Part shown: positions 3,943 to 59,435 of the stretch, in pieces
Numbering within the stretch: the stretch's first letter is position 1
How the letters are laid out: every line of letters begins with the position of its first letter
Virus record (IMG/VR): IMGVR_UViG_3300035182_002586
Coordinates: 310,001-374,000 of that record
DNA: 64,000 nucleotides
Direction: 5' to 3' (one strand)
Notes under the pieces: model-generated
The model's database searches: none
The model's input: only the letters and a program-made list of their open reading frames with translations
What the model was told of the DNA's origin: nothing
Made by a program: the position numbers and the translations under genes

Positions 3943-5115
3943 CTAGGTGACGGAAGCCGTCCGGGTCACCCCGGACAGGGGCAGAGCACGCACCTTCTCC
4001 GGGTCCAGGTGCACCGCGAACTCGAACGTCGCGATGATCTCCCACCTGTCGTAGACTTCCCTCTCTTCACACCGGAAGCTCAAGGGGTCCACGACGATGG
4101 CCCCTGCCTTCGCGCCCACTCCTACGGGGAGTACGTCGCAGATGAGGCAAGAAGCCTCGGGCGAGACGGCTCGTAGAGCCTTCGCATCGTCGGCTCCCGC
4201 GACCCACAACAGAGCCGGGTCGACATCCCCCGGCTGGAGCGTCCTCACGTCCACAGGGGAGAAGCTCCCCGTGTGGGCGAGAGTCGACACCTCGTGGGCG
4301 ATCTCGGCCACCCATCCGAGCCCGATGGCGGCCTGGAGATGGCGAACGCGGTCGAACGAGAGGTTGAAGGTCGTGGGGTCGCTGATGGGGACACGCGCAC
4401 GCGCAACCCCGGCGCAGCGGATCGCAGACTGAACCTTGTAGGTAGTGGTGGGTTCGTCCTGCCGTACGTCGAAGCGGTCGAGGAACTCCTTGGCCGTCCC
4501 CTGCACCAGGCCCAGGCCCAGGGTTTCGGGGAGCATCTCGCGGATGTGGTTGAACACGCTGCGACGCCCACCGGCCGTAACCGGCAGGAGTCTACGATCG
4601 CCCATCTCCCGCAGCATCGGAGTCTGCGTCGAGCGGGCCAGCATCTCCGCGTGGATGCGCTTGTCGCGCTCCCTGTCGAACTGCCACCGGACGAGGAACC
4701 CCTCCACCTCGGGGCGAAGACGAGGGAGAGGCTTCGCCATGCCCCCGCCTTCACGAGGCACGGGGGCCGGCTGCCAGATGTCTTCCTCCGTCACACGGGT
4801 GACGGCGCGACCGGTCTCCCGGTCGATGATGAGGATCGCGTCCCCGATCTGCGAGTACTCGTCGGCCAGGTATTCGGTGGCCTGTTGGACATCACCCTCG
4901 TGCGTGTCCAACGTTTCGGCCATGATGGGGAGCACGGCTTCGATGAGGCGGTCTCGGCCCCAATGCTCTTCCTTGGACCACCGGAAGATGTCCTTGAGGA
5001 GGGAGCTGCGCTCGATGGCCCCACGGGCCGCCAAGAGCCCCGTAGCCGAAGGGTTGGCCTTCGTATCGACGGTGATGGCCCCGGCTTCGGGCCCGAGGTG
5101 TGCGAGGTCCGCCAT
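3943..5115 (-). CDS. hypothetical phage protein
   Basis: 390-aa ORF, high GC3, 10 nt downstream of the AAA gene. Confidence 0.75.
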   Translation of the reverse strand: MADLAHLGPEAGAITVDTKANPSATGLLAARGAIERSSLLKDIFRWSKEEHWGRDRLIEAVLPIMAETLDTHEGDVQQATEYLADEYSQIGDAILIIDRETGRAVTRVTEEDIWQPAPVPREGGGMAKPLPRLRPEVEGFLVRWQFDRERDKRIHAEMLARSTQTPMLREMGDRRLLPVTAGGRRSVFNHIREMLPETLGLGLVQGTAKEFLDRFDVRQDEPTTTYKVQSAIRCAGVARARVPISDPTTFNLSFDRVRHLQAAIGLGWVAEIAHEVSTLAHTGSFSPVDVRTLQPGDVDPALLWVAGADDAKALRAVSPEASCLICDVLPVGVGAKAGAIVVDPLSFRCEEREVYDRWEIIATFEFAVHLDPEKVRALPLSGVTRTASVT

Positions 5116-18640: not shown

Positions 18641-18664
18641 GGGGTCGGATCTACACCGGGCACG

Positions 18665-19024: not shown

Positions 19025-19042
19025 CCTACGGATCTACACCGC

Positions 19043-19596: not shown

Positions 19597-19613
19597 TACA
19601 CCACGTCGGTGTA
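19597..19613. promoter_or_regulatory. back-to-back GGTGTA motifs between divergent genes (also 23959-23974, 28777-28794, variant 30988-31005)
   Basis: TACACC-N4..6-GGTGTA; motifs mostly ~10-12 nt from a start codon. Confidence 0.6.
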
Positions 19614-23948: not shown

Positions 23949-23986
23949 GGGCCGAGACTACACCAGCCGGTGTACCGGCGCGCCCG

Positions 23987-25158: not shown

Positions 25159-25671
25159 CAATACGAGTCGACCTGCTCGAAGTGTCGACACCGCTGGCAG
25201 TGGACCGGCTACAAGACCGGGCTCGGCAAGACGGCCGCGCAGCTCGAAGAGATGCGTACGGCGGGCAAGACCTGCCCCCGCTGCGGTGGACCTGCGACGG
25301 TCGGCCTCGACAACACGAGCGAAGGGGCACAGGCGTTGAACGGTACGCTCGGGAGTCTCTTTGGCGCGCTCGTTCAGAAGCCCGCCCCGTCGCACGGCCT
25401 CCCCCCTCCCCCCTCCGCTTTCTCCACGGCGGAGCCTGTGGTCTTTCCACCCTCGCCATCGCCGCCCTCCCCGACGACGGAGATGTTTCACAGCGGTAGG
25501 CTAGCGCTGGAGACGTTCCACGCCGTCCAAGCCGCCCTCCTGAACTCGGAGTGCAGCCCCCGCGAGGCTGTCGCCGCCGCCCTCAAGGCCGTCGCGCAGT
25601 TCGCCGATGCCGAATCCGTCCTCGGATTCACCGACCTCGCCCGTACGGCGTGGGTGCACAAGGACGGCTGA
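25159..25671 (+). CDS. CxxC/CxxC protein with no identifiable start codon (possibly 5'-truncated)
   Basis: QYESTCSKCRHRWQWTGYKTGLGK...TCPRCGG with high GC3; upstream in-frame sequence looks like antisense shadow. Confidence 0.5.
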   Translation, partial: QYESTCSKCRHRWQWTGYKTGLGKTAAQLEEMRTAGKTCPRCGGPATVGLDNTSEGAQALNGTLGSLFGALVQKPAPSHGLPPPPSAFSTAEPVVFPPSPSPPSPTTEMFHSGRLALETFHAVQAALLNSECSPREAVAAALKAVAQFADAESVLGFTDLARTAWVHKDG

Positions 25672-25697
25672 AAAGCCTCTTGTGCGGCGGGCCGTGT

Positions 25698-27029
25698 ATG
25701 AGCCCGCCCCCGGTTGCCCCCATGCCGATCCGCGTCCTCGACCGCTACGCGGCCGAGACGAAACTCGCGGAAGACCTGACAAAGGGGTGGCTCCTCAAGG
25801 TCAAGAAGCTCTGGAACGACACCCTCAAGAACAACTGGTCGGCCTACAAGACGTTCCAAACACTGGAATACCTGGTGAAGGGCCTCCGTGAGCAGGTGGT
25901 CTTCCAGCGCCAGGGGTACAACACCAAGCACGACTTCTTCGCCCTCCGTCGGAAGATGGAAGCCGCTGTCGAGAAGGTGCTGCACGAGATCCAGGTCAAG
26001 AGCGCCGAGTACGAGAAGCTCAACAACGAGCACACGCACGCTTCGTACGCCGTGCAGGACGCTCGCCTCAAGATCGAGGACGAGACCGGGGACCGCCTCC
26101 AGAAGTTGGGGCCCGAGGAGTACTTCGCGAAGCACCCCGAGGTGAAGCCGCTCAAGGAGAAAGAGGACGCCCTCTACGACCGCCTCAAACCGTTCTCGTA
26201 CGGGCACCTCGTCAAGACACTCGCCCCCGTCACGCGCCACTTCGACGAGCTGATGAAGATCCTCTACGAGGACGCGGCCGACCTCGCCGATGCTCGTAGC
26301 AAGGGTGTAGATGTCGCGGACAAGACCGCGGATCGGGTCTTCGACATCTACGGGATGAAGGTCATCGTCATCGACCCCGAGCTGACGGCCACCGACGTCC
26401 GCAAGTACATCGGCTTCATCGACCAAGCCTATGCAGAGCTGTCGAGGAAGAAGCTGACGCAGGCCGTCTGGAAGGGAAAGTGCTTCATCGACCTCGGGAA
26501 GAATAAGGTCTACACCCCCGAGGAGATGGAGTTCCGCAAGCAGTGGGGGTACACGAACGACGGGGAGGCCGCCCACTACCTATACGGGAAGGACGAGATC
26601 CACCTCACGATGCCGGCGACGAACCACGTTGCCTACACGATCGTGCACGAGATGGGGCACCGCTACTGGTTCAAGGTCATGACCCCCGAGCAGCGGGCCG
26701 TCTTCAACAACCTCGTCCGCACGAAAGAGACCGTGCACAAGCGGGACTTCCCGCAGGGCCCGACGGACGACGAGGGGTACAAGAAGCCCGTGGCGCCGCT
26801 GAACGACTACGCCTCCTCCAACATCGAGGAGGCGTTCGCCGAGGTCTTCGAGGCGTTCGTGATGGGCGGGGAACTCGACCGGGACCAGTTGGAGTCGTTC
26901 AAGAGCGTCCTCCAGCACAAGTTCGCGAGCATCACCGCTCGCGTCCTGGCCCGCTACTTGGCCGCCGGTTCGACGTTCGCGTGCGTCGACCAGAACCACG
27001 CGGACTCCGCCCACTCCTCGGGCGTGTAG
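25698..27029 (+). CDS. zincin-like (HEXXH) metallopeptidase-domain protein
   Basis: IVHEMGHRYWF and downstream DYASSNIEEAFAEVF. Confidence 0.75.
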   Translation: MSPPPVAPMPIRVLDRYAAETKLAEDLTKGWLLKVKKLWNDTLKNNWSAYKTFQTLEYLVKGLREQVVFQRQGYNTKHDFFALRRKMEAAVEKVLHEIQVKSAEYEKLNNEHTHASYAVQDARLKIEDETGDRLQKLGPEEYFAKHPEVKPLKEKEDALYDRLKPFSYGHLVKTLAPVTRHFDELMKILYEDAADLADARSKGVDVADKTADRVFDIYGMKVIVIDPELTATDVRKYIGFIDQAYAELSRKKLTQAVWKGKCFIDLGKNKVYTPEEMEFRKQWGYTNDGEAAHYLYGKDEIHLTMPATNHVAYTIVHEMGHRYWFKVMTPEQRAVFNNLVRTKETVHKRDFPQGPTDDEGYKKPVAPLNDYASSNIEEAFAEVFEAFVMGGELDRDQLESFKSVLQHKFASITARVLARYLAAGSTFACVDQNHADSAHSSGV

Positions 27030-27541
27030 AGCCGCTGGAACGTCCCGCCAGTCTTCTGGAGCTGGTTACGCGCCATCGTCGTCGGGTCCATCGGGATGGG
27101 CCCGTCGTACGGACTCGCGTTGATCGAGACGACCTCCCAGTCCGCATCCGTCGAGGCGTCGGAACCGAGCGCGTCCCGGTGGTAGAGGATGATCTCCACG
27201 TGCTTCGCCGGGACCTTCACCCCCGTCATCACCGTACGCAGTACGGCCTCTTCCCCGGGGGCACGAGGCGCGAACGTGGTCCGAACCACGTCGCCCTCCT
27301 GGAGGGGGCGCACAGCCGTCCAGAAGCCCTCCACGGGCACCGAGACACGGAGGATGGTCCGCTCCTTGTTCACGGGGATCGCCTTCCCTAAGTGCTCTCG
27401 CACGAGCAGGAGAAGGTCGTAGTCCGTCTCGTCAGGTGTGGGGCCGGTGAAGTGGGCGAAGCTCGACTCCGGGGTCTGGCGACGCGCGAAGCCGATCTCG
27501 AACGAGGCGCCCATGCCGGGGGGACAGTTCATCATGCTCAT
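26954..27541 (-). CDS. DUF3228-like protein
   Basis: VEIILYHRDAL...DADWEVVSINA...PMDPTTMARN...GGT...AWFWSTHA pattern. Confidence 0.6.
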   Translation of the reverse strand: MSMMNCPPGMGASFEIGFARRQTPESSFAHFTGPTPDETDYDLLLLVREHLGKAIPVNKERTILRVSVPVEGFWTAVRPLQEGDVVRTTFAPRAPGEEAVLRTVMTGVKVPAKHVEIILYHRDALGSDASTDADWEVVSINASPYDGPIPMDPTTMARNQLQKTGGTFQRLYTPEEWAESAWFWSTHANVEPAAK

Positions 27542-27616
27542 GGCCCTAGAGACGCGTGAGGAATGCGCTGTCTGACACTACACCGAGCAGAACCCTCTTG
27601 TCCGCCACCCCTGGTG

Positions 27617-28390
27617 ATGGACACGGCTACCCGCGTGGCGACGCGCTTCCTCCTCGCCACCACCGACATCACGAAGGAATACGTCGAGGAGTTGCTCCAC
27701 ACCAAGGGCTTGTCCCCGATGGCGCTGAGCAAGCTCAAGTCCGTCGCCTACCAGCTCGACATCGGGGGCATGGACGCCTTCCCGGCTGTGGAGTTGCCCG
27801 CCTTCCTGGAGGAGCGCGGTGTTGATGAGGAGTCCATCGAGACACTCAAGAAGGCGCTCACCAAGAAGCCACCGAAGCCGAAGACCGGGGTGTCGTTCAA
27901 CGACGCCTGGATGCAGCTCGGGCGAGCCACCGGCAAGAGCGTCATCTTCCAGGGCGGGCTGGAGCACCAGAAAGACGCAGCGAAGGGCGTCCTCGGTTGG
28001 ATCAAGGCCCTCAAAGGCTTGAAACCAAAGGCAAAGAGCGTCTTCGACAACATGGTCCACAAGATCCGCCTCCGCTCCGGGCGGGGCTCGGAAGACGCTT
28101 CGTGGGACAGCGGGGGCGTCCTTAGCCTCGTCGTCGAGAGCGGTACGCACTCCTCGGGCACCCTCGCGTTCTTCGTCACCCACGAGCTGGGCCACGCCGT
28201 CGAAGAGCACGCCCACGTGCACACACACGAGGCCCCGTGGGGGGCCCCGCCGTTCATCTCTGAGTACGCCGCCTCCAAGCCCTTCGTCGAGGACTTCGCC
28301 GAGTGCTTCCGTGCGTACGTCTTGGAGCCGAGTGCCTTGAAAAAGGCCAGCCCGGCGAAATTCGACGCGGTGAAAGCCCTCGTTGGGTAG
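27617..28390 (+). CDS. second HEXXH metallopeptidase-domain protein
   Basis: VTHELGHAVEE and SEYAASKPFVEDFAECFRAY; N-terminal TRVATRF. Confidence 0.75.
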   Translation: MDTATRVATRFLLATTDITKEYVEELLHTKGLSPMALSKLKSVAYQLDIGGMDAFPAVELPAFLEERGVDEESIETLKKALTKKPPKPKTGVSFNDAWMQLGRATGKSVIFQGGLEHQKDAAKGVLGWIKALKGLKPKAKSVFDNMVHKIRLRSGRGSEDASWDSGGVLSLVVESGTHSSGTLAFFVTHELGHAVEEHAHVHTHEAPWGAPPFISEYAASKPFVEDFAECFRAYVLEPSALKKASPAKFDAVKALVG

Positions 28391-28618
28391 TCAGCCGGGG
28401 CCGAAGCTCGCCGTCGTACCCCCAAAGAGCGCTTTCACAAGGCGATAGGTCACACTCCCGCTGAGCCCGGCGAACGCGCCGAAAGCGATACGGGTTACCC
28501 CGGCCACCCCCGGCAGCATGAAGCCAGGGGAGAACACGAGCGCTCCCGTGAGAGGCAAGAGCAAGGGCTCGCAGAGGATGACCCACCGAGGCATGCGCCA
28601 CGGCACCTCGACAACCAC
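28391..28618 (-). CDS. small hydrophobic, probably membrane protein
   Basis: Hydrophobic segments VILCEPLLLPLTGALVF and IAFGAFAGL. Confidence 0.4.
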   Translation of the reverse strand: MVVEVPWRMPRWVILCEPLLLPLTGALVFSPGFMLPGVAGVTRIAFGAFAGLSGSVTYRLVKALFGGTTASFGPG

Positions 28619-28619
28619 C

Positions 28620-28766
28620 TCACGGTAGGTGTCGATCCCACGCGGAGGCTCCCGCTTGCTTAGCGTCCCGCGCGAGAACGTGAAGCAGCCTGCGCAGCCA
28701 GAAGCCGATGAAGCTCGCGATCCCGAACAGGATCAGCGTGGGCCACGAAAGCAGCAGGTCTGGCAC
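28620..28766 (-). CDS. small single-TM protein
   Basis: GTG start 10 nt after GGTGTA; LLLSWPTLILFGIASFIGFWLRR. Confidence 0.55.
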   Translation of the reverse strand: MPDLLLSWPTLILFGIASFIGFWLRRLLHVLARDAKQAGASAWDRHLP

Positions 28767-28805
28767 GCCTCTACTGTACACCGTCTGTGGTGTACCTGCC
28801 GGCGC

Positions 28806-29057
28806 ATGGGCTACCACCTGCGTGAGATCGAGACGAAGGGCTTCTACGGCGACCCCTCCAAGATCCGTGAAGAGCTGGAGGAACTCGAAGAGTCGCTCGA
28901 CCAAGACAACCGCATCCTCGCCCTCGTCGAGCTGTCAGACCTGTACGGCGCCCTCGAAGGGGTCGCCGAGAAGCTCGGTTCCAACATGGAGGAGCTGCGC
29001 AAGATGTCGGACGCGACGAAGCGGGCCTTCCGTGATGGCTCCCGGAGGTCGAAGTGA
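28806..29057 (+). CDS. MazG-like nucleotide pyrophosphohydrolase-fold protein
   Basis: KIREELEELEE...LVELSDLYGA (ExxE/ExxD helices). Confidence 0.6.
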   Translation: MGYHLREIETKGFYGDPSKIREELEELEESLDQDNRILALVELSDLYGALEGVAEKLGSNMEELRKMSDATKRAFRDGSRRSK

Positions 29058-29623
29058 TCAACTGGAGCGCCATCGGGGAGGCCGTCCAGTACTACCGACG
29101 TCACGGCTTCACGTACGTCGAGGTCCCATGGATCGTTCCCCGTGCAGTGATCGACGTCACCATCCCCCCGGGACACGTTCCCCACGAGACCACGGGTGGG
29201 GCCCTCGTCGGTTCCGCAGAGCAGTCTTTCGTCGCGATGATGCTCGACGGCCAGCTCAAGCGAGGCGAAAGCTACGTGGCTGCATCCCCCTGCTTCCGGG
29301 ATGATCCCCCGGACCGTCTCCATCAGACCACGTTCTTCAAGGTCGAGCTGGTCTACATCTCCGATGGCCAGGACCCGTGGGACGAAGACCTCAAGAGAAA
29401 GTTCGCGCACGGGATGGCGCTGACCGCACAGAGGTTCTTCCACTCCACCCTGCTCCCTAAGGGCTCTCCGGCTACAAGCATCGTCCAGACAGCAGACGGC
29501 TACGACATCGAGTACCAAGGCATCGAGCTTGGGAGCTACGGCGTCCGGGGACACAACGGCTGGACGTGGGTTTACGGCACCGGCCTCGCCGAACCTCGCT
29601 TCTCCATCGCCACCAAGGGCTGA
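29054..29623 (+). CDS. class II aminoacyl-tRNA-synthetase-like catalytic domain, no anticodon-binding domain
   Basis: GFTYVEVPWI (motif 1-like), SPCFRDD...HQTTFFKVEL (motif 2), IELGSYG...GTGLAEPRF (motif 3); GTGA overlap with the upstream gene. Confidence 0.75.
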   Translation: MINWSAIGEAVQYYRRHGFTYVEVPWIVPRAVIDVTIPPGHVPHETTGGALVGSAEQSFVAMMLDGQLKRGESYVAASPCFRDDPPDRLHQTTFFKVELVYISDGQDPWDEDLKRKFAHGMALTAQRFFHSTLLPKGSPATSIVQTADGYDIEYQGIELGSYGVRGHNGWTWVYGTGLAEPRFSIATKG

Positions 29624-29658
29624 CCGTACCCGCACACACGGCACGGGATGATGCGCAT

Positions 29659-29805
29659 TCAAGACGGGAGCGGTCGCCCCGTCTCGTGCGAGATCCCGTT
29701 GTCCGTGCAGACGCAGGCGCTCTCGTTCCCCGCCCACACCCCGCACGTCGACGACATGGGGTCCAGGGTGCACGGGCACAGGGAGGCAGTGGCGTCGCTC
29801 TTCAT
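29659..29805 (-). CDS. 48-aa Cys-rich peptide
   Basis: Manual: MKSDATASLCPCTLDPMSSTCGVWAGNESACVCTDNGISHETGRPLPS; ATG 10 nt after GGTGTA. Confidence 0.4.
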   Translation of the reverse strand: MKSDATASLCPCTLDPMSSTCGVWAGNESACVCTDNGISHETGRPLPS

Positions 29806-29861
29806 GGGAGAGAAGTACACCGGCCGCGTCAGAGATCGCTCCGCCCCTGCGTCTCTCGGGC

Positions 29862-30359
29862 ATGACCCACAACCCCCGCCACAACCCCTTCGGTTACTAC
29901 GCCCGCCTGGAAGACCCCACCCTGCTGCAAGCCAGCCTCGTGGGGGTCGTCCAAGGGCTTGCCGAGGATAGCTCCCCCGCCAAGAACCCCAACGAGTTCT
30001 CCCTGCCCATGGTGGTGGCCGGGGATACCATCCGCGCTCACTTCGAGGTCCCTGAGGTTCTCGAAGAGTGGCTCCTGAGCCACTCCGATGACGGCCCGCG
30101 TACGGCCGTCTCCCTCCACACGCGACTGATCGCGGACGGGGTGCTGCACCTCACGCTCTCGACTGCGGCCCTCGACGCAGAGACGCTCTACCTCCTCACG
30201 GAAGAGTTGCAGAGCATGCTCACCACCCTGGTGGTCATCTACGACGTGCCCGACAACGACCCGCTGGTGATGACGGCCGAGCAGGTCATCTCGGTCGCGA
30301 ACCGGGTTCTGGCGAAGTACGTGACCGACCTTCTCATCCGCGAGTTGACCTCGAACTAG
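29862..30359 (+). CDS. hypothetical protein
   Basis: 165 aa, high GC3. Confidence 0.7.
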   Translation: MTHNPRHNPFGYYARLEDPTLLQASLVGVVQGLAEDSSPAKNPNEFSLPMVVAGDTIRAHFEVPEVLEEWLLSHSDDGPRTAVSLHTRLIADGVLHLTLSTAALDAETLYLLTEELQSMLTTLVVIYDVPDNDPLVMTAEQVISVANRVLAKYVTDLLIRELTSN

Positions 30360-30451
30360 AGACGGGTAGGATTCCCCTATGCCCTCGCTGCCCCACCTGC
30401 GGCCCTCCGTCACTCTCGCGCGCCTGACGGGCGCGCGGAGTGGAGGAAATC

Positions 30452-30748
30452 ATGTCGCATCGAGGGGATCGAAGGGATCGGACCACCCGCTACGCTAGAC
30501 GTGCGCGTCAGGTCTGGGTGTCGTTCGGCTACAAGCCCCACCCCATCGGGTGGTTCGCCAAGGGAAAGGCCATCGGCTGCCGGTGCCGGCGTAGCCCGAA
30601 AGGTAACCCCAAGGTGCCGGGGTCGCTCTGCCACGTGGGCAACCATCGCTTCCATGAGACCGTGATGGAGCGCATCGAGGGCAAGCGCCTGTGCCGCGCA
30701 TGGCAGCGGAAGCTACTGGCGGAGGACCCGCTAGACGTGGAGCTGTGA
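30452..30748 (+). CDS. small Arg-rich, Cys-containing protein
   Basis: GGAGG then ATG at 30452. Confidence 0.55.
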   Translation: MSHRGDRRDRTTRYARRARQVWVSFGYKPHPIGWFAKGKAIGCRCRRSPKGNPKVPGSLCHVGNHRFHETVMERIEGKRLCRAWQRKLLAEDPLDVEL

Positions 30749-30976: not shown

Positions 30977-31015
30977 GGCCTCACTGTAACACCGGGTCTG
31001 GTGTAAGGGAGAGGC

Positions 31016-31939: not shown

Positions 31940-32887
31940 TCAGGGGAGGGTTCGGGGGCGCCCCACCTGACGAGGGTGTTGGATGCCGTGTTCGACGAGA
32001 TGCCGTCGCACGGTCGTCTCGGTCTGTCCTAGCTCCCGCGCGATGCGCTTGATGGGGACTCCCTTCGCGGACATCTCCCGGAGCACCTTCGGCGTGAGCA
32101 CCTGCCTGACCTGGTAGTGCGGCCCCTGAAAGCCGAAGGTGAGCTTGTGGGTCATGCACTCTGGCATGTGGGGCTTCACGAGGGCGATGAACCGGAGAGC
32201 CTGCTCTTCCCCCTCCAGGTGGAAGACTCCAGTGTTCCCCTTGCAGACCTCCCATCGGGGACGAAAGCCAAACTGGTCGAAGACACCCATCGCGATGCCC
32301 TGACTCACGGGGTCCATGCCGAAGGTGATGCGAGGCCACCAGCCTACCGAACCGTCGTCCATGAACCACACGGCTAGGACGAGACTGTCTACGACGTGGA
32401 GGACCTCCCGGGTAAGGTGCTTCGGGCCATCCCCGTCATAGAAGCGCTCATGCCACTCGACCAGGCTCGCATGGGAAACTGTGTGGAAGCGCCACCCGGG
32501 GAATTCACGCCCTTCCCTGCGCCACACAACAGGGGCTAGAGGGGCTTGCACCCACTGACCCCACTCCCTGGCTTTCCACTCGATGTACGCGTGCTGCGCG
32601 TCAGAGTGGTTCTCCTGATAACGAGCTGCATGAGGCGTTCGCGAGAGACGGCCATCACCGAGCATCGATCCCACCAGGATGGACTGGAGGCGCCCCTCAA
32701 TAGGCGTGACGGTGTTCCTCTCTGCACGCTCCAGCGTCCGAATGCCATAATGCTTCCGCCAAGAACGCACCCTTTTCAGGGTCGTGGGTTCTCCGAGGCG
32801 AGTGACGATCTCTTCGTCGGTCAGCTTCTCTTCGATGTACAGGCGAGCGAGTTCTTCGGGGGGTACGGGGCACTCGATACGACGCAT
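31940..32887 (-). mobile_element. free-standing LAGLIDADG homing endonuclease with flanking HTH-like segments
   Basis: ILVGSMLGDGRL and LVLAVWFMDDGS; downstream of the major capsid gene; ATG 10 nt after GGTGTA. Confidence 0.88.
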
Positions 32888-32908
32888 ACCGATAGTGTAC
32901 ACCACGTT

Positions 32909-33026: not shown

Positions 33027-33959
33027 TCAGAAGCGGCTGATCACGAGACGGGTCAGGCCACGGGGGTTGAACGCCCCAATGCCGATGTTTTCGAAGCAAG
33101 AGAATCCGATCGTCCGGTTCTTCGGGTCGTCGGCGCTGAGCACGGTCAGCTCCGTACGAACCGGGAAGCGGCCGAAGTTCTCCGGCTCTGCGCACACGTA
33201 CACGAACCCGACCGGCACGAGGCGGCTCGTGATGATCTGCGCGCCCCAGAGGACGGCCTGGAGGCCCGTCTTGAGGAGGGTTGCCTGCGACTCGATGTCG
33301 AGGATGTCGCGGCCGAACTTGCGGATGTCCGCGTAGTCGACTGCGTTCATGTAGATGCGTGCCACGCGGAGGTCGTGGCGCTCGATCTCGGCGAACGCGT
33401 CCGCGAGGACCGACGGCGAGATGGGGGCGACCACGGCCACGTCCGGGTTCGTCTGACCCGGGAGGGTGTCGAAGCCCGACACCGCGATGCTGTCGAGGAC
33501 TGCGAAGACGCGCTCGTCTTCCGCCGCCTGGATCTGCGCCTTCGCGAGGTCCTGGCTGCGCTCGATCAGGTCGAAGCGACGCTCCTTGATCTGCGTGAGC
33601 GGGATCTCCGGGTTCGAGGCGATCTCGAACAGCGGGAAGATCACGCGGCGCGGCTTCTGGACGGCGAGGATGTTCTCGCCTTCCTCGCCGACGACGAAGG
33701 CCGTGACGTCCGGGTCCTTGTCATAGATCGGGAGTGCCCCGTCCGGAAGCTGCTCCACGAGGAAGGTCTTGCGACCGACCGCCGTGTAGTCGCGACGGAG
33801 GCGGAGCGGCTGGATCATCGATGCTGCGAGCTTCGCGCGGCCAGCGGCCGTCTTGATGTACTCGCTGATGATCGCCTGCTTGGTCTCGTTGGAGACCACC
33901 ATCTGCTGCTGGGCGACCGGGGAGAAGCCGCCCATCATCTGCTGCTGCGTCTGGAACAT
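33027..33959 (-). CDS. major capsid protein (HK97-fold expected)
   Basis: GRAKLAASMIQPLR..DY..VGR..VEQLPDGALPIYDKD, FEIASNP, AEDERVF; follows protease, scaffold and a decoration-like gene; followed by a terminator. Confidence 0.8.
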   Translation of the reverse strand: MFQTQQQMMGGFSPVAQQQMVVSNETKQAIISEYIKTAAGRAKLAASMIQPLRLRRDYTAVGRKTFLVEQLPDGALPIYDKDPDVTAFVVGEEGENILAVQKPRRVIFPLFEIASNPEIPLTQIKERRFDLIERSQDLAKAQIQAAEDERVFAVLDSIAVSGFDTLPGQTNPDVAVVAPISPSVLADAFAEIERHDLRVARIYMNAVDYADIRKFGRDILDIESQATLLKTGLQAVLWGAQIITSRLVPVGFVYVCAEPENFGRFPVRTELTVLSADDPKNRTIGFSCFENIGIGAFNPRGLTRLVISRF

Positions 33960-59407: not shown

Positions 59408-59435
59408 GAACTCCTAGACGGTGTAGTAGACACCC

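What the first reader, a model, noticed from the sequence alone, without database searches (positions are those of the whole stretch)
28806..29623. Coupled MazG-like + stripped-down class II aaRS-like pair
Seen: an 83-aa ExxE/ExxD helical protein overlaps (GTGA) a 189-aa protein with class II motifs 1-3 but no anticodon-binding domain, behind one GGTGTA motif. Established: aaRS-II paralogs (EpmA/PoxA, AsnA) ligate amino acids to non-tRNA substrates; LysRS-type domains make Ap4A; MazG folds hydrolyse (d)NTPs or alarmones. Inference: a two-gene module for nucleotide/base modification, protein aminoacylation or interference with nucleotide signalling.
Basis: partly seen in the sequence, partly recalled or inferred. 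Interest (0 to 1): 0.6.

Follow-up and report, generated by a model that had tools for sequence, protein, structure and literature searches.

The report
Mini seryl-tRNA-synthetase core plus MazG-like partner
A huge phage carries a widely conserved but never studied two-gene unit: a stripped-down serine-activating enzyme derived from seryl-tRNA synthetase, coupled to (and in some lineages fused with) a tiny MazG/HisE-like nucleotide pyrophosphatase; what the pair makes is still unknown.

Summary
Window 28806-29057 (83 aa, A) and 29054-29623 (189 aa, B) overlap by GTGA behind one GGTGTA motif.

B folds with high confidence (pLDDT 95.8) as a class II synthetase core. Its closest relatives by fold and profile are bacterial-type SerRS, not LysRS/EpmA/AsnA. 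All SerRS ATP-, Mg- and serine-binding residues are invariant across the family. The N-terminal tRNA-binding arm is absent and the motif-2 loop is 7 residues shorter.

A is a three-helix protein with an invariant EExxE...ExxD motif, so it is probably MazG/HisE-like. The fold evidence alone is weak.

The pair is a real unit:
- It occurs in the same roughly 270 phage records.
- A lies within 1.1 kb upstream of B, or is fused to it, in 29 of 32 loci.
- The 4-nt overlap recurs in other genomes.
- Single-polypeptide fusions exist in both orders (Ma-LMM01 gp131, DPANN/CPR contigs, an NCLDV-like contig).
- Natural variants are mostly synonymous.

Function is untested, and no paper in the searched library describes it. 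My best reading (about 0.4) is a two-part enzyme in which seryl-adenylate chemistry is coupled to an NTP-pyrophosphohydrolase step on a nucleotide-type substrate. The main rival (about 0.3) is a mini-SerRS acting on tRNA.

The parts
28789..28794 (+). GGTGTA upstream motif, 11 nt before the start codon of A. It is the right arm of an inverted pair GTACACC-N6-GGTGTAC (28776-28795).
   Evidence: The motif is enriched 3.4-fold in the window and sits 10-12 nt before at least 12 start codons. It is present before A and absent before B.
28806..29057 (+). Gene A: an 83-aa, three-helix, acidic protein (pI 4.9). It is a minimal MazG/HisE-like all-alpha NTP pyrophosphohydrolase candidate (phrog_6408).
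   Evidence: Translation. phrog_6408 at 4.5e-27. Invariant E22, E23, E26, E42 and D45, plus Y3, H4, K19 and R80. Model pLDDT 92.4. The Foldseek top list is MazG/HisE/iMazG/dCTPase but at E 0.2-2. VIA Z is at most 6.4 and not discriminating. A family member (P0270) passes the Pfam PRA-PH cut-off, 22.2 against 21.3.
29054..29057 (+). GTGA overlap of the stop codon of A and the start codon of B (translational coupling).
   Evidence: The same 4-nt overlap occurs in phi92 and in metagenomic loci L006, L008 and L010.
29054..29623 (+). Gene B: a 189-aa miniaturised seryl-tRNA-synthetase catalytic core (phrog_4806). It has motifs 1-3 and the serine-, ATP- and Mg-binding residues, but no N-terminal tRNA-binding arm.
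   Evidence: Translation. phrog_4806 at 7e-40. Model pLDDT 95.8. SerRS best by Foldseek (1e-9), by VIA (Z 17-19, 180 of 189 residues aligned, 19-24% identity) and by profile against PDB (1.7e-5). hhalign to E. coli SerRS residues 184-327 at probability 89%. Invariant S54, E56, R82, E98, E158, S161, T176 and R182.

Best explanation
The two genes encode one functional unit, a small two-part enzyme of large DNA viruses.

B is a seryl-tRNA-synthetase catalytic core reduced to its minimum. Because every residue that SerRS uses to bind ATP, Mg and serine is kept, B most likely condenses serine with ATP to form enzyme-bound seryl-adenylate (inferred from residue conservation, not assayed). Because the tRNA-binding arm is gone and the acceptor-stem-binding motif-2 loop is shortened, the serine is probably not delivered to tRNASer in the normal way (inferred).

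A is a minimal MazG/HisE-type pyrophosphohydrolase that cleaves PPi from a nucleoside-triphosphate-like substrate (inferred from its invariant metal-binding motif). A and B act together. What is shown: conserved adjacency, 4-nt overlap, correlated divergence, and natural single-chain fusions in both orders.

My preferred mechanism has the two activities meeting on one nucleotide-type molecule. Either A produces the NMP-type acceptor that B serylates, or B first modifies an NTP and A then removes PPi to make the step irreversible, as HisE does after HisG/HisZ. The outcome would be a serine-nucleotide product, or a nucleotide-pool function needed by large viruses and by ultra-small symbionts. 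The identity of the acceptor is not established.
For: Unit character:
- B occurs in 276 phage records and A in 268, with matching counts per host genus.
- A is within 1.1 kb upstream on the same strand, or fused, in 29 of 32 loci.
- B-A fusions: Ma-LMM01 gp131, loci L020, L022, L023 and L032, and P0325 and P0359. One A-B fusion: P0271.
- Mantel r = 0.52 between A and B distances, with 0 of 2000 permutations reaching it.

B chemistry:
- SerRS is the top match by fold and by profile.
- LVGSAEQSF aligns to LIPTAEVPL, PCFRDD to PCFRSE, and FFKVEL to QFDKVEM.
- E158/S161 and T176/R182 correspond to the SerRS EISS and GSGLAVGR elements.

Not a normal SerRS:
- B is 189 aa and aligns only to SerRS residues from about 184 onward. 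There is no Seryl_tRNA_N or tRNA-synt_2b hit.
- One contig encodes a full-length SerRS 0.9 kb from a B-A fusion.
- The cassette occurs in phages without a tRNA-Ser gene.

Nucleotide link:
- A's motif.
- Neighbours include frd and td, NrdD, NrdR, an RNR small subunit, pyrimidine genes and AAA_28 nucleoside/nucleotide-kinase-like genes directly upstream in L022, L024 and L027.
- The A domain is also fused to a PolB-type exonuclease and, weakly, to a CYTH domain.

From established knowledge: every characterised class II core-only paralogue (AsnA, EpmA, HisZ, amino acid:carrier-protein ligases, Pol gamma B) has a non-tRNA role.
Against: No enzymatic step has been measured and no acceptor has been identified. 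The complex prediction gave no verdict, so physical binding rests on the fusions and the genomic coupling only.

Several neighbourhoods are translation-related rather than nucleotide-related:
- A YqeY-like gene directly after B in phi92.
- PTH2 and Thg1.
- EF-Ts.
- EF-G, MetRS and R2K ligases.
- RF-1.

Some B homologues carry an N-terminal helix-hairpin-helix nucleic-acid-binding domain. Both points fit a tRNA or RNA acceptor.

A's assignment to the MazG fold is weak on structure alone. The A domain is promiscuous, with many other fusion partners, so A could be a generic accessory or oligomerisation module.
Confidence: 0.4

Rival explanations
1. B is a true minimal seryl-tRNA synthetase that charges host or phage tRNASer (or another tRNA) through the acceptor end only. 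It would support translation in infected cells. A would be an accessory subunit, or would serve a parallel function.
For: - Full conservation of the SerRS active site.
- The cassette is restricted to large, tRNA-rich viruses. The window's own genome has 53 tRNAs, including 3 tRNA-Ser, and a tmRNA.
- Translation-gene neighbours: YqeY, PTH2, Thg1, EF-Ts, EF-G, MetRS and RF-1.
- N-terminal helix-hairpin-helix fusions in Caulobacter phages and metagenomic members.
- No full-length SerRS in this phage.
Against: - B lacks the arm that recognises the tRNASer variable arm in all domains of life, and the motif-2 loop is 7 residues shorter.
- Both proteins are acidic, with median pI 5.3 and 5.0.
- There is no known role for a MazG-like partner in tRNA charging, yet the partner is nearly obligatory and even fused.
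- The cassette is present in phages without tRNA-Ser and beside a full-length SerRS.
Confidence: 0.3
2. B aminoacylates a protein, as EpmA/PoxA does with EF-P. The target would be, for example, a translation factor, a ribosomal protein or A itself.
For: - Precedent of EpmA, a core-only class II paralogue (established knowledge; the fold match to 3a5y is Z 13.4).
- Neighbours in L071 are two R2K ATP-grasp peptide ligases and EF-G.
- Small radical SAM genes lie next to the B-A fusion in L022, L023 and L032. This recalls the EpmA-EpmB pairing.
- A has invariant S18 and K19.
Against: - No conserved candidate target gene accompanies the cassette other than A.
- The radical SAM proteins are 229-256 aa, too small for a lysine-aminomutase-type enzyme, and they are absent from most phages.
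- A's invariant acidic motif points to catalysis, not to a substrate role.
Confidence: 0.1
3. The pair makes or destroys dinucleoside polyphosphates or alarmones. B would use seryl-AMP to adenylate ATP, NTPs or ppGpp (Ap4A-type products), and A would hydrolyse these or (p)ppGpp. The effect would be to manipulate host stress or immune nucleotide signalling.
For: - Established knowledge: aaRSs, including SerRS, form Ap4A from aminoacyl-adenylate.
- MazG-type enzymes act on NTP-like molecules.
- The cassette is self-contained and flanked by opposite-strand genes in the window and in L006 and L008, as accessory or anti-defence genes often are.
- A Tad2-like gene and an HD_4 gene occur nearby in L008 and L010.
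Against: - A synthase coupled or fused to a hydrolase of its own product would be futile.
- The cassette also occurs in DPANN/CPR genomic contexts and on an NCLDV-like contig, where bacterial alarmone or defence signalling is not expected.
- No defence-related association is seen consistently.
Confidence: 0.1
4. A and B are two independent enzymes, a house-cleaning NTPase and an aaRS-like enzyme. They are only co-regulated, or B is an inactive remnant of a full-length synthetase.
For: - The A domain occurs with many other partners and alone.
- Three loci have B without A within reach.
Against: - Fusions in both orders in independent lineages.
- Near-identical distribution of A and B.
- The recurrent 4-nt overlap.
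- Invariant catalytic residues and mostly synonymous variation.
- A stable length of about 180-200 aa in hundreds of clusters.
Confidence: 0.07

Closest known systems
Bacterial-type seryl-tRNA synthetase (SerRS), catalytic domain
   Same: Same fold: Z 17-19, 180 of 189 residues aligned, 19-24% identity. Same motifs 1-3. Same serine-binding elements: S/T-A-E, the E of KVE, and the T of G-T/S-G. Same ATP/Mg elements: motif-2 R, E..S, and motif-3 R.
   Different: B has no N-terminal coiled-coil tRNA-binding arm. Its motif-2 loop is 7 residues shorter, and several surface insertions and the C-terminal tail are deleted. It does not reach the Pfam or NCBIfam cut-offs. It always travels with a MazG-like partner.
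Core-only class II paralogues with non-tRNA acceptors: EpmA/PoxA, AsnA, amino acid:carrier-protein ligases (Bll0957), HisZ
   Same: All are a catalytic core without a tRNA-recognition domain. As with the aa:CP ligases, the ancestry is SerRS-like. All are encoded next to a partner gene.
   Different: The fold matches are weaker than to SerRS: Bll0957 Z 14.6, AsnA 13.5, EpmA 13.4, and HisZ 16-17 at only 9-10% identity. The partner is not a carrier protein, EF-P or HisG. B is about 100 aa shorter than any of them. Unlike HisZ, it keeps the catalytic arginines.
MazG / HisE (PRA-PH) / iMazG all-alpha NTP pyrophosphohydrolases
   Same: A has the EExxE-(15)-ExxD metal-binding pattern on two consecutive helices and a K/R-bearing third helix. 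Its size (83 aa) is like S. solfataricus MazG 1vmg or iMazG. The best sequence-bearing structural matches are 24-26% identical over 58-59 residues.
   Different: A has only three helices, plus a conserved extended N-terminus with an invariant G-Y-H. It is unusually conserved (60-85% identity across distant viruses). It is below the family thresholds. It is tied to an aaRS-like enzyme.
HisG(S)-HisZ plus HisE in histidine biosynthesis (an analogy of logic, not of membership)
   Same: A class II aaRS-like protein works with a nucleotide-modifying step. A HisE-type pyrophosphohydrolase then removes PPi from the modified ATP.
   Different: No HisG-like transferase is present. B itself is catalytically equipped and binds serine, not histidine. 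There is no histidine-pathway context.

Membership tests
Class II aminoacyl-tRNA synthetase catalytic-core superfamily | Antiparallel beta-sheet core with motif 1 (helix-strand with invariant Pro), motif 2 (fRxE ... F.K.E) and motif 3 (GxGxGxxR) | tested here: met
   Model pLDDT 95.8. At least 500 Foldseek hits, all class II aaRS. VIA Z up to 19. P25, R82, E98 and R182 are invariant in 43 sequences.
Seryl-tRNA synthetase (bona fide SerRS) | Serine- and ATP-binding residues of the SerRS active site (T/S-x-E, E of KVE, E..S metal site, T and R of motif 3) | tested here: met
   S54, E56, E98, E158, S161, T176 and R182 are invariant. Aligned to E. coli SerRS by hhalign and by inspection of the SerRS sequence.
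Seryl-tRNA synthetase (bona fide SerRS) | N-terminal coiled-coil arm (Seryl_tRNA_N) that binds the tRNASer variable arm | tested here: not met
   B is 189 aa and its residue 13 aligns to SerRS residue 184. The model starts at the motif-1 helix. No upstream in-frame extension exists in the window.
Seryl-tRNA synthetase (bona fide SerRS) | Full-length motif-2 loop and a score above the curated family cut-offs (Pfam tRNA-synt_2b, TIGR00414 serS) | tested here: not met
   The distance from R to E in motif 2 is 16 residues, against 23 in E. coli SerRS. serS scores 11.8 bits against a cut-off of 301. There is no PF00587 match in the whole phage genome.
Seryl-tRNA synthetase (bona fide SerRS) | Aminoacylation of tRNASer | not testable with these tools
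   This needs an in vitro charging assay.
MazG / HisE all-alpha NTP pyrophosphohydrolase superfamily | EExxE ... ExxD metal-binding motif on adjacent helices | tested here: met
   E22, E23, E26, E42 and D45 are invariant in 43 homologues. They align with the EEvGEl...EElaDv of S. solfataricus MazG 1vmg.
MazG / HisE all-alpha NTP pyrophosphohydrolase superfamily | Helical-bundle fold and a score above a curated family cut-off | tested here: inconclusive
   The Foldseek top list is dominated by MazG, HisE, iMazG and dCTPase, but at E 0.2-2. VIA Z is at most 6.4, within helical background. The window protein scores PRA-PH 12 bits against 21.3. Family member P0270 scores 22.2 against 21.3.
MazG / HisE all-alpha NTP pyrophosphohydrolase superfamily | Hydrolysis of an NTP to NMP + PPi | not testable with these tools
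   This needs an enzyme assay.
   EpmA 3a5y Z 13.4, AsnA 11as Z 13.5 and LysRS Z 14.1, against SerRS Z 17-19. The profile search against PDB finds only SerRS and PylRS.
Amino acid:carrier-protein ligases (Bll0957 type) | SerRS-like core encoded next to a phosphopantetheinylated carrier protein that accepts the amino acid | tested here: not met
   Bll0957 (3mey) scores Z 14.6. The adjacent small protein A gives no carrier-protein match in the fold or family searches.
HisZ (ATP-PRT regulatory subunit) | HisRS-like core without catalytic arginines, partnered with HisG | tested here: not met
   HisZ chains score Z 16-17 but at only 9-10% identity. B keeps the motif-2 and motif-3 arginines. No HisG-like neighbour is found in any locus examined.

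The most novel reading that the evidence does not exclude
The A-B unit synthesises a so far unknown serine-nucleotide conjugate, for example a 2'/3'-O-seryl-nucleotide that mimics the aminoacylated 3' end of tRNA. B would serylate an NTP or NMP, and A's HisE-like PPi release would make the step irreversible. Such a product would be needed by large DNA viruses of all three domains and by ultra-small CPR/DPANN symbionts. At about 180 aa, B would also be the smallest natural catalytically complete class II synthetase core.
Probability: 0.2. Interest if true: 0.85.

Novelty: new variant of a known kind. Interest (0 to 1): 0.62.

Why it matters
Phage genomes routinely annotate this gene as 'histidyl' or 'seryl tRNA synthetase' without comment. 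It is not a normal synthetase. It is a catalytic core of about 180-190 aa that always travels with a tiny MazG/HisE-like protein and is sometimes fused to it.

The unit is abundant:
- About 1000 clusters of A at 50% identity.
- About 400 clusters of B at 90% identity.

It is also widespread:
- Escherichia, Acinetobacter, Caulobacter and Microcystis phages, and huge phages.
- Contigs binned to CPR bacteria and DPANN archaea.
- One NCLDV-like contig.

Working out its reaction would do three things. It would correct a common misannotation. It would add a new member to the short list of aaRS paralogues with non-canonical acceptors, or define a natural minimal SerRS, which bears on ideas about ancestral 'urzyme'-size synthetases. 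It could also reveal a nucleotide- or translation-directed takeover function shared by large viruses. The isolates phi92, Ma-LMM01 and Acinetobacter phage Phab24 make it directly testable.

Tried and rejected
- Megablast of window 28000-30500 against the phage collection found no match. The phage itself is new.
- Sequence search of A and B against PDB chains found nothing useful for the single sequences. Only the family profiles reached SerRS and, weakly, MazG.
- Complex prediction on A+B gave 'no answer' (median score 0.05, mark 0.32). It is not used as evidence either way.
- Hypothesis 'the cassette serves phage-encoded tRNA-Ser': rejected as a general rule. Ma-LMM01 has only tRNA-Met and tRNA-Tyr, and in Phab24 ARAGORN typed only a tRNA-Arg (a second, weak 87-nt Rfam tRNA match, 30.5 bits, was left untyped).
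- Hypothesis 'a YqeY-like tRNA-binding protein is a third constant partner', from phi92 gp195 (PF09424, 30 bits): rejected. There is none in the window's genome, and no similarity to the extra domains of the Acinetobacter A-fusions or to the window's downstream ORF.
- Hypothesis 'A is a split-off SerRS N-terminal arm or a carrier protein': not supported. A is acidic, has short helices and an invariant metal-binding motif, and gives no carrier-protein or SerRS-arm matches.
- A search for A-B fusions among the first 240 word-search proteins found none. Fusions appeared only in phage and genome loci and in the exhaustive profile search.
- Pfam and NCBIfam scans of most extra domains fused to A, and of most phage neighbours, found no families.
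- Seven literature searches found no paper that describes the pair. The only mentions are annotation-level, for example phage RXM (PMC8953757).
- No RNA run holds the region, so expression could not be checked.
No alternative genetic code was used.
Full report
**1. What is in the window**

ORF A runs from ATG 28806 to the stop at 29055-29057 and encodes 83 aa. ORF B runs from GTG 29054 to the stop at 29621-29623 and encodes 189 aa. The two overlap in the tetranucleotide GTGA.

The mechanical ORF list offers a longer frame for A starting at 28629. All homologues begin with M-G-Y-H, exactly as at 28806.

A GGTGTA hexamer lies 11 nt upstream of that ATG. The hexamer occurs 34 times in the window, against 10.0 +/- 3.4 in shuffles. 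In at least a dozen cases it sits 10-12 nt before a start codon.

The cassette is flanked by small opposite-strand ORFs, each with its own GGTGTA: 28620-28766 and 29659-29805. It therefore looks like an autonomous two-gene unit.

**2. Where it comes from**

The window is bases 310001-374000 of a 528,957-bp virus record, and the source contig is 620 kb. The record has 63.9% G+C, 53 tRNA genes (three of them tRNA-Ser) and a tmRNA. A major capsid gene lies at 33027-33959.

The same DNA is held by sediment and microbial-mat metagenomes. No isolate phage is similar at the DNA level. The phage has no full-length SerRS core (PF00587), no canonical MazG and no YqeY protein.

**3. Protein B**

Curated family scans give only sub-threshold class II synthetase hits. 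B belongs firmly to phrog_4806 (7e-40). The word search finds 399 clusters, nearly all 178-200 aa long. Related ESM Atlas clusters are 91-100% viral.

AlphaFold with 43 homologues gives pLDDT 95.8. The comparisons with solved structures agree:
- By Foldseek, the best matches are SerRS and PylRS catalytic domains.
- By exhaustive structural alignment, bacterial-type SerRS chains lead with Z 17-19, 178-180 of 189 residues aligned and 19-24% identity. PylRS and HisZ/HisRS follow at Z 15-17. AsnA and EpmA follow at Z about 13.5.
- A family profile searched against PDB sequences finds SerRS first (1.7e-5) and then PylRS.
- hhalign places B residues 13-144 on E. coli SerRS residues 184-327.

The invariant columns of the family coincide with the functional residues of SerRS:
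- S54-A-E56 corresponds to the T-A-E that holds the serine amino group.
- R82 and D/E84 correspond to motif 2, fRxE.
- E98 corresponds to the E of F-x-K-V-E.
- E158 and S161 correspond to the E-I-S-S metal site.
- T176 and R182 correspond to G-S-G-L-A-x-x-R of motif 3.
- Motif 1, with its invariant proline (P25), is also present.

The following parts of SerRS are missing:
- The roughly 180 N-terminal residues, which include the coiled-coil tRNA arm.
- Seven residues of the motif-2 loop.
- Several surface insertions.

B is therefore a catalytically complete but minimal SerRS-derived core, not a gene fragment. In related metagenomic contigs laid on the region, 26 of 32 listed differences fall at third codon positions. 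Of those 32, 25 are synonymous and 7 are not, and five of the seven (residues 126-132) cluster in one variable loop.

**4. Protein A**

A belongs to phrog_6408, a family of unknown function (4.5e-27). The model (pLDDT 92) has an extended N-terminus and three helices.

Invariant residues include E22, E23, E26, E42 and D45, which is the EExxE...ExxD pattern of MazG and HisE. Also invariant are Y3, H4, K19 and R80.

The evidence for a MazG-like assignment has three strands:
- The Foldseek list is dominated by MazG, HisE, iMazG and dCTPase, but at E 0.2-2.
- The exhaustive aligner gives Z of at most 6.4. That is within the background for small helical proteins, although the hits with real sequence identity (24-26%) are again MazG and HisE.
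- Sub-threshold Pfam and NCBIfam hits point the same way. One family member passes the PRA-PH cut-off.

I take A to be a minimal MazG/HisE-like pyrophosphohydrolase, with a confidence of about 0.8.

A is markedly more conserved than B. Identity to the window proteins is 60-85% for A and 40-56% for B. The mean pairwise distance over 27 loci is 0.52 for A and 0.62 for B.

**5. The pair is a unit**

- tblastn finds B in 276 phage records and A in 268, with almost identical counts per host genus: Escherichia 112/113, Acinetobacter 61/59, Caulobacter 13/13, and so on.
- In 29 of 32 distinct loci taken from isolates, metagenomes and genome bins, A lies within 1.1 kb upstream on the same strand or is fused to B. 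In three loci B is alone.
- The 4-nt overlap recurs in phi92 (gp197/gp196), L006, L008 and L010.
- The distance matrices of A and B are correlated (Mantel r 0.52, 0 of 2000 permutations).

The most telling evidence is the set of natural fusions, which exist in both orders.
- B-A in Microcystis phage Ma-LMM01 gp131. B spans residues 3-184 and A spans 188-266, with the G-Y-H of A only about six residues after B's last helix.
- B-A in four contigs binned to DPANN archaea and a Woesebacterium.
- B-A in P0325 and P0359, and A-B in P0271.
- P0359 sits on a contig with an mRNA-capping enzyme, an XPG nuclease, an RNR small subunit and an SNF2 helicase. This is an NCLDV-like context.

Both fail, so the finding stands.

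**6. Clues to function**

(a) Nucleotide-metabolism neighbours:
- frd - x - x - A - B - td in the T4-like Morganella phage MP1.
- NrdD downstream in phi92.
- NrdR next to the fusion in L032.
- An RNR small subunit in L065.
- Pyrimidine-synthesis genes in L069.
- AAA_28 nucleoside/nucleotide-kinase-like genes directly upstream, and overlapping, in L022, L024 and L027.

(b) Small radical SAM genes abut the fusion in L022, L023 and L032, and one lies nearby in Ma-LMM01.

(c) Translation neighbours:
- A YqeY-like protein directly after B in phi92.
- PTH2 and Thg1 in L010.
- EF-Ts and a second truncated class II core in L070.
- EF-G, two R2K ATP-grasp ligases, MetRS and EF-Ts in L071.
- RF-1 in L069.
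- A full-length SerRS 0.9 kb from the fusion in L020.

(d) Some B homologues carry an N-terminal helix-hairpin-helix domain: the RNA-polymerase alpha-CTD type in Caulobacter phage CcrPW, and a Pol I thumb-like type in P0046 and P0047.

(e) The A domain is promiscuous. Among the best 150 representatives of 998 clusters, the architectures are:
- A alone: 48.
- A with an N-terminal extension: 58.
- A with a C-terminal extension: 29.
- Tandem A-A: 12.
- The extensions include a PolB-type exonuclease and, weakly, a CYTH domain.

(f) A phage tRNA-Ser gene is not required.

(g) Both proteins are acidic.

**7. Interpretation**

Shown: the anatomy, the family relationships, the coupling and the purifying selection.

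Inferred:
- B forms seryl-adenylate.
- A is an NTP-type pyrophosphohydrolase.
- The two act on a common substrate or as a complex.

The acceptor of serine is unknown. I favour a nucleotide-type acceptor or a nucleotide-pool role, at about 0.4, for four reasons:
- Every characterised core-only class II paralogue has a non-tRNA acceptor.
- The tRNASer recognition elements are gone.
- A nearly obligatory, sometimes fused, NTP-pyrophosphohydrolase has no place in ordinary tRNA charging, but fits a sequential nucleotide reaction. The logic would be that of HisG/HisZ followed by HisE.
- The unit sits beside a normal SerRS in one genome.

The mini-SerRS reading remains a serious rival at about 0.3, because of the translation-gene neighbourhoods and the appended nucleic-acid-binding domains. 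The remaining probability is shared by three readings: protein serylation (EpmA-like), Ap4A or alarmone metabolism, and mere co-regulation.

The complex prediction returned no verdict and is not used.

**8. Comparison with what is known, and novelty**

Both families are catalogued (PHROGs) and are annotated in GenBank as 'histidyl' or 'seryl tRNA synthetase' and 'MazG-like' or 'hypothetical'. The phi92 record even notes both folds.

I found no paper in the searchable library that describes the pairing, the fusions or any experiment.

I file the unit as a new variant of a known kind, the aaRS paralogues that lack tRNA-recognition domains. Three features distinguish it: SerRS ancestry, extreme miniaturisation and an obligate MazG/HisE-like partner.

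- Read laying was given 1201 letters.
- No alternative genetic code was invoked.
- The exhaustive protein search was used once, because the family scans left protein A open.

Noticed in passing
window, e.g. 18652-18657(-), 19035-19040(-), 19608-19613(+), 23959-23974, 28776-28795, 29816-29821(-), 31000-31005(+), 32898-32903(-), 59420-59425(+): GGTGTA is 3.4-fold enriched (34 sites against 10 expected). In a dozen or more cases it lies exactly 10-12 nt before an ATG or GTG start. Several sites form inverted pairs (TACACC-N-GGTGTA) between divergent genes. It is too far from the start codon for a classical Shine-Dalgarno site, so it may be a phage-specific promoter, a leaderless-start element or a translation-initiation element.
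   Followed up: partly
window 28620-28766 (-) and 29659-29805 (-): Two unannotated small ORFs of 48 aa flank the cassette on the opposite strand. Each starts 10 nt after a GGTGTA. The first has a clear single transmembrane helix and high GC3. The second is cysteine-rich.
   Followed up: no
window 25551-27029 (+), 27563-28390 (+), 26954-27541 (-): Two neighbouring proteins carry HExxH motifs (HEMGH and HELGH) and a shared EDFAE/EEAFAE-like C-terminal motif. One gives a weak Peptidase_Mx hit. A DUF3228 protein lies between them on the other strand. None has a PHROG family.
   Followed up: no
window 31940-32905 (-), next to the major capsid gene at 33027-33959 (-): A LAGLIDADG_2 homing endonuclease with a C-terminal HTH lies immediately downstream of the major capsid gene.
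   Followed up: no
own genome G000:C1:123254-176528 (outside the window): The 529-kb phage carries 53 tRNA genes, including one with anticodon UUA (which would read the UAA stop codon), and a tmRNA with tag ANDNGTVITALKAAA. The genes examined in the window read normally under table 11. No recoding was assumed.
   Followed up: no
L022:3370-5474, L023:3944-5469, L032:3237-4804, L024:3127-4534, L027:3043-4495: In contigs binned to DPANN archaea and CPR bacteria, with cellular-looking neighbours such as rpoC, NrdR, RtcA and transporters, the unit is embedded in a larger conserved operon. That operon has an AAA_28 nucleoside/nucleotide-kinase-like gene upstream, a small (229-256 aa) radical SAM gene abutting the B-A fusion, or both. 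Three DPANN loci also share a divergent 290-aa winged-helix-like gene.
   Followed up: partly
L020:1798-3093 and 3977-4792: A full-length bacterial-type SerRS (430 aa, 34% identical to E. coli SerRS) lies about 0.9 kb upstream of a B-A fusion on the same 23-kb contig.
   Followed up: partly
L070:689-1462; L071:139-7392: Other phage contigs with the cassette carry more translation genes close by. L070 has a second truncated class II core (257 aa, PF00587, with an LRPE-type motif) and EF-Ts. L071 has EF-G, two R2K ATP-grasp ligases, MetRS and EF-Ts.
   Followed up: no
L003:2857-3480 (Acinetobacter phage Bhz15), L005:2759-3499 (Phab24), L012:3495-3998 (Erwinia phage pEp_SNUABM_01): In these phages A is fused to extra domains of unknown family. 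In the Acinetobacter phages the extra domain is C-terminal and about 125-165 aa; the Phab24 one recurs on either side of A in metagenomic proteins P0266, P0318 and P0323, whereas the Bhz15 extension formed no cluster. In the Erwinia phage it is N-terminal and 85 aa. Tandem A-A proteins are also common (12 of 150 representatives).
   Followed up: partly
L001:3743-4597 (Caulobacter phage CcrPW gp140); P0046, P0047: Some B homologues have an N-terminal helix-hairpin-helix domain. In CcrPW it is the RNA polymerase alpha-CTD type (8e-6). In P0046 and P0047 it resembles the DNA polymerase A thumb. This suggests nucleic-acid contact in those lineages.
   Followed up: partly
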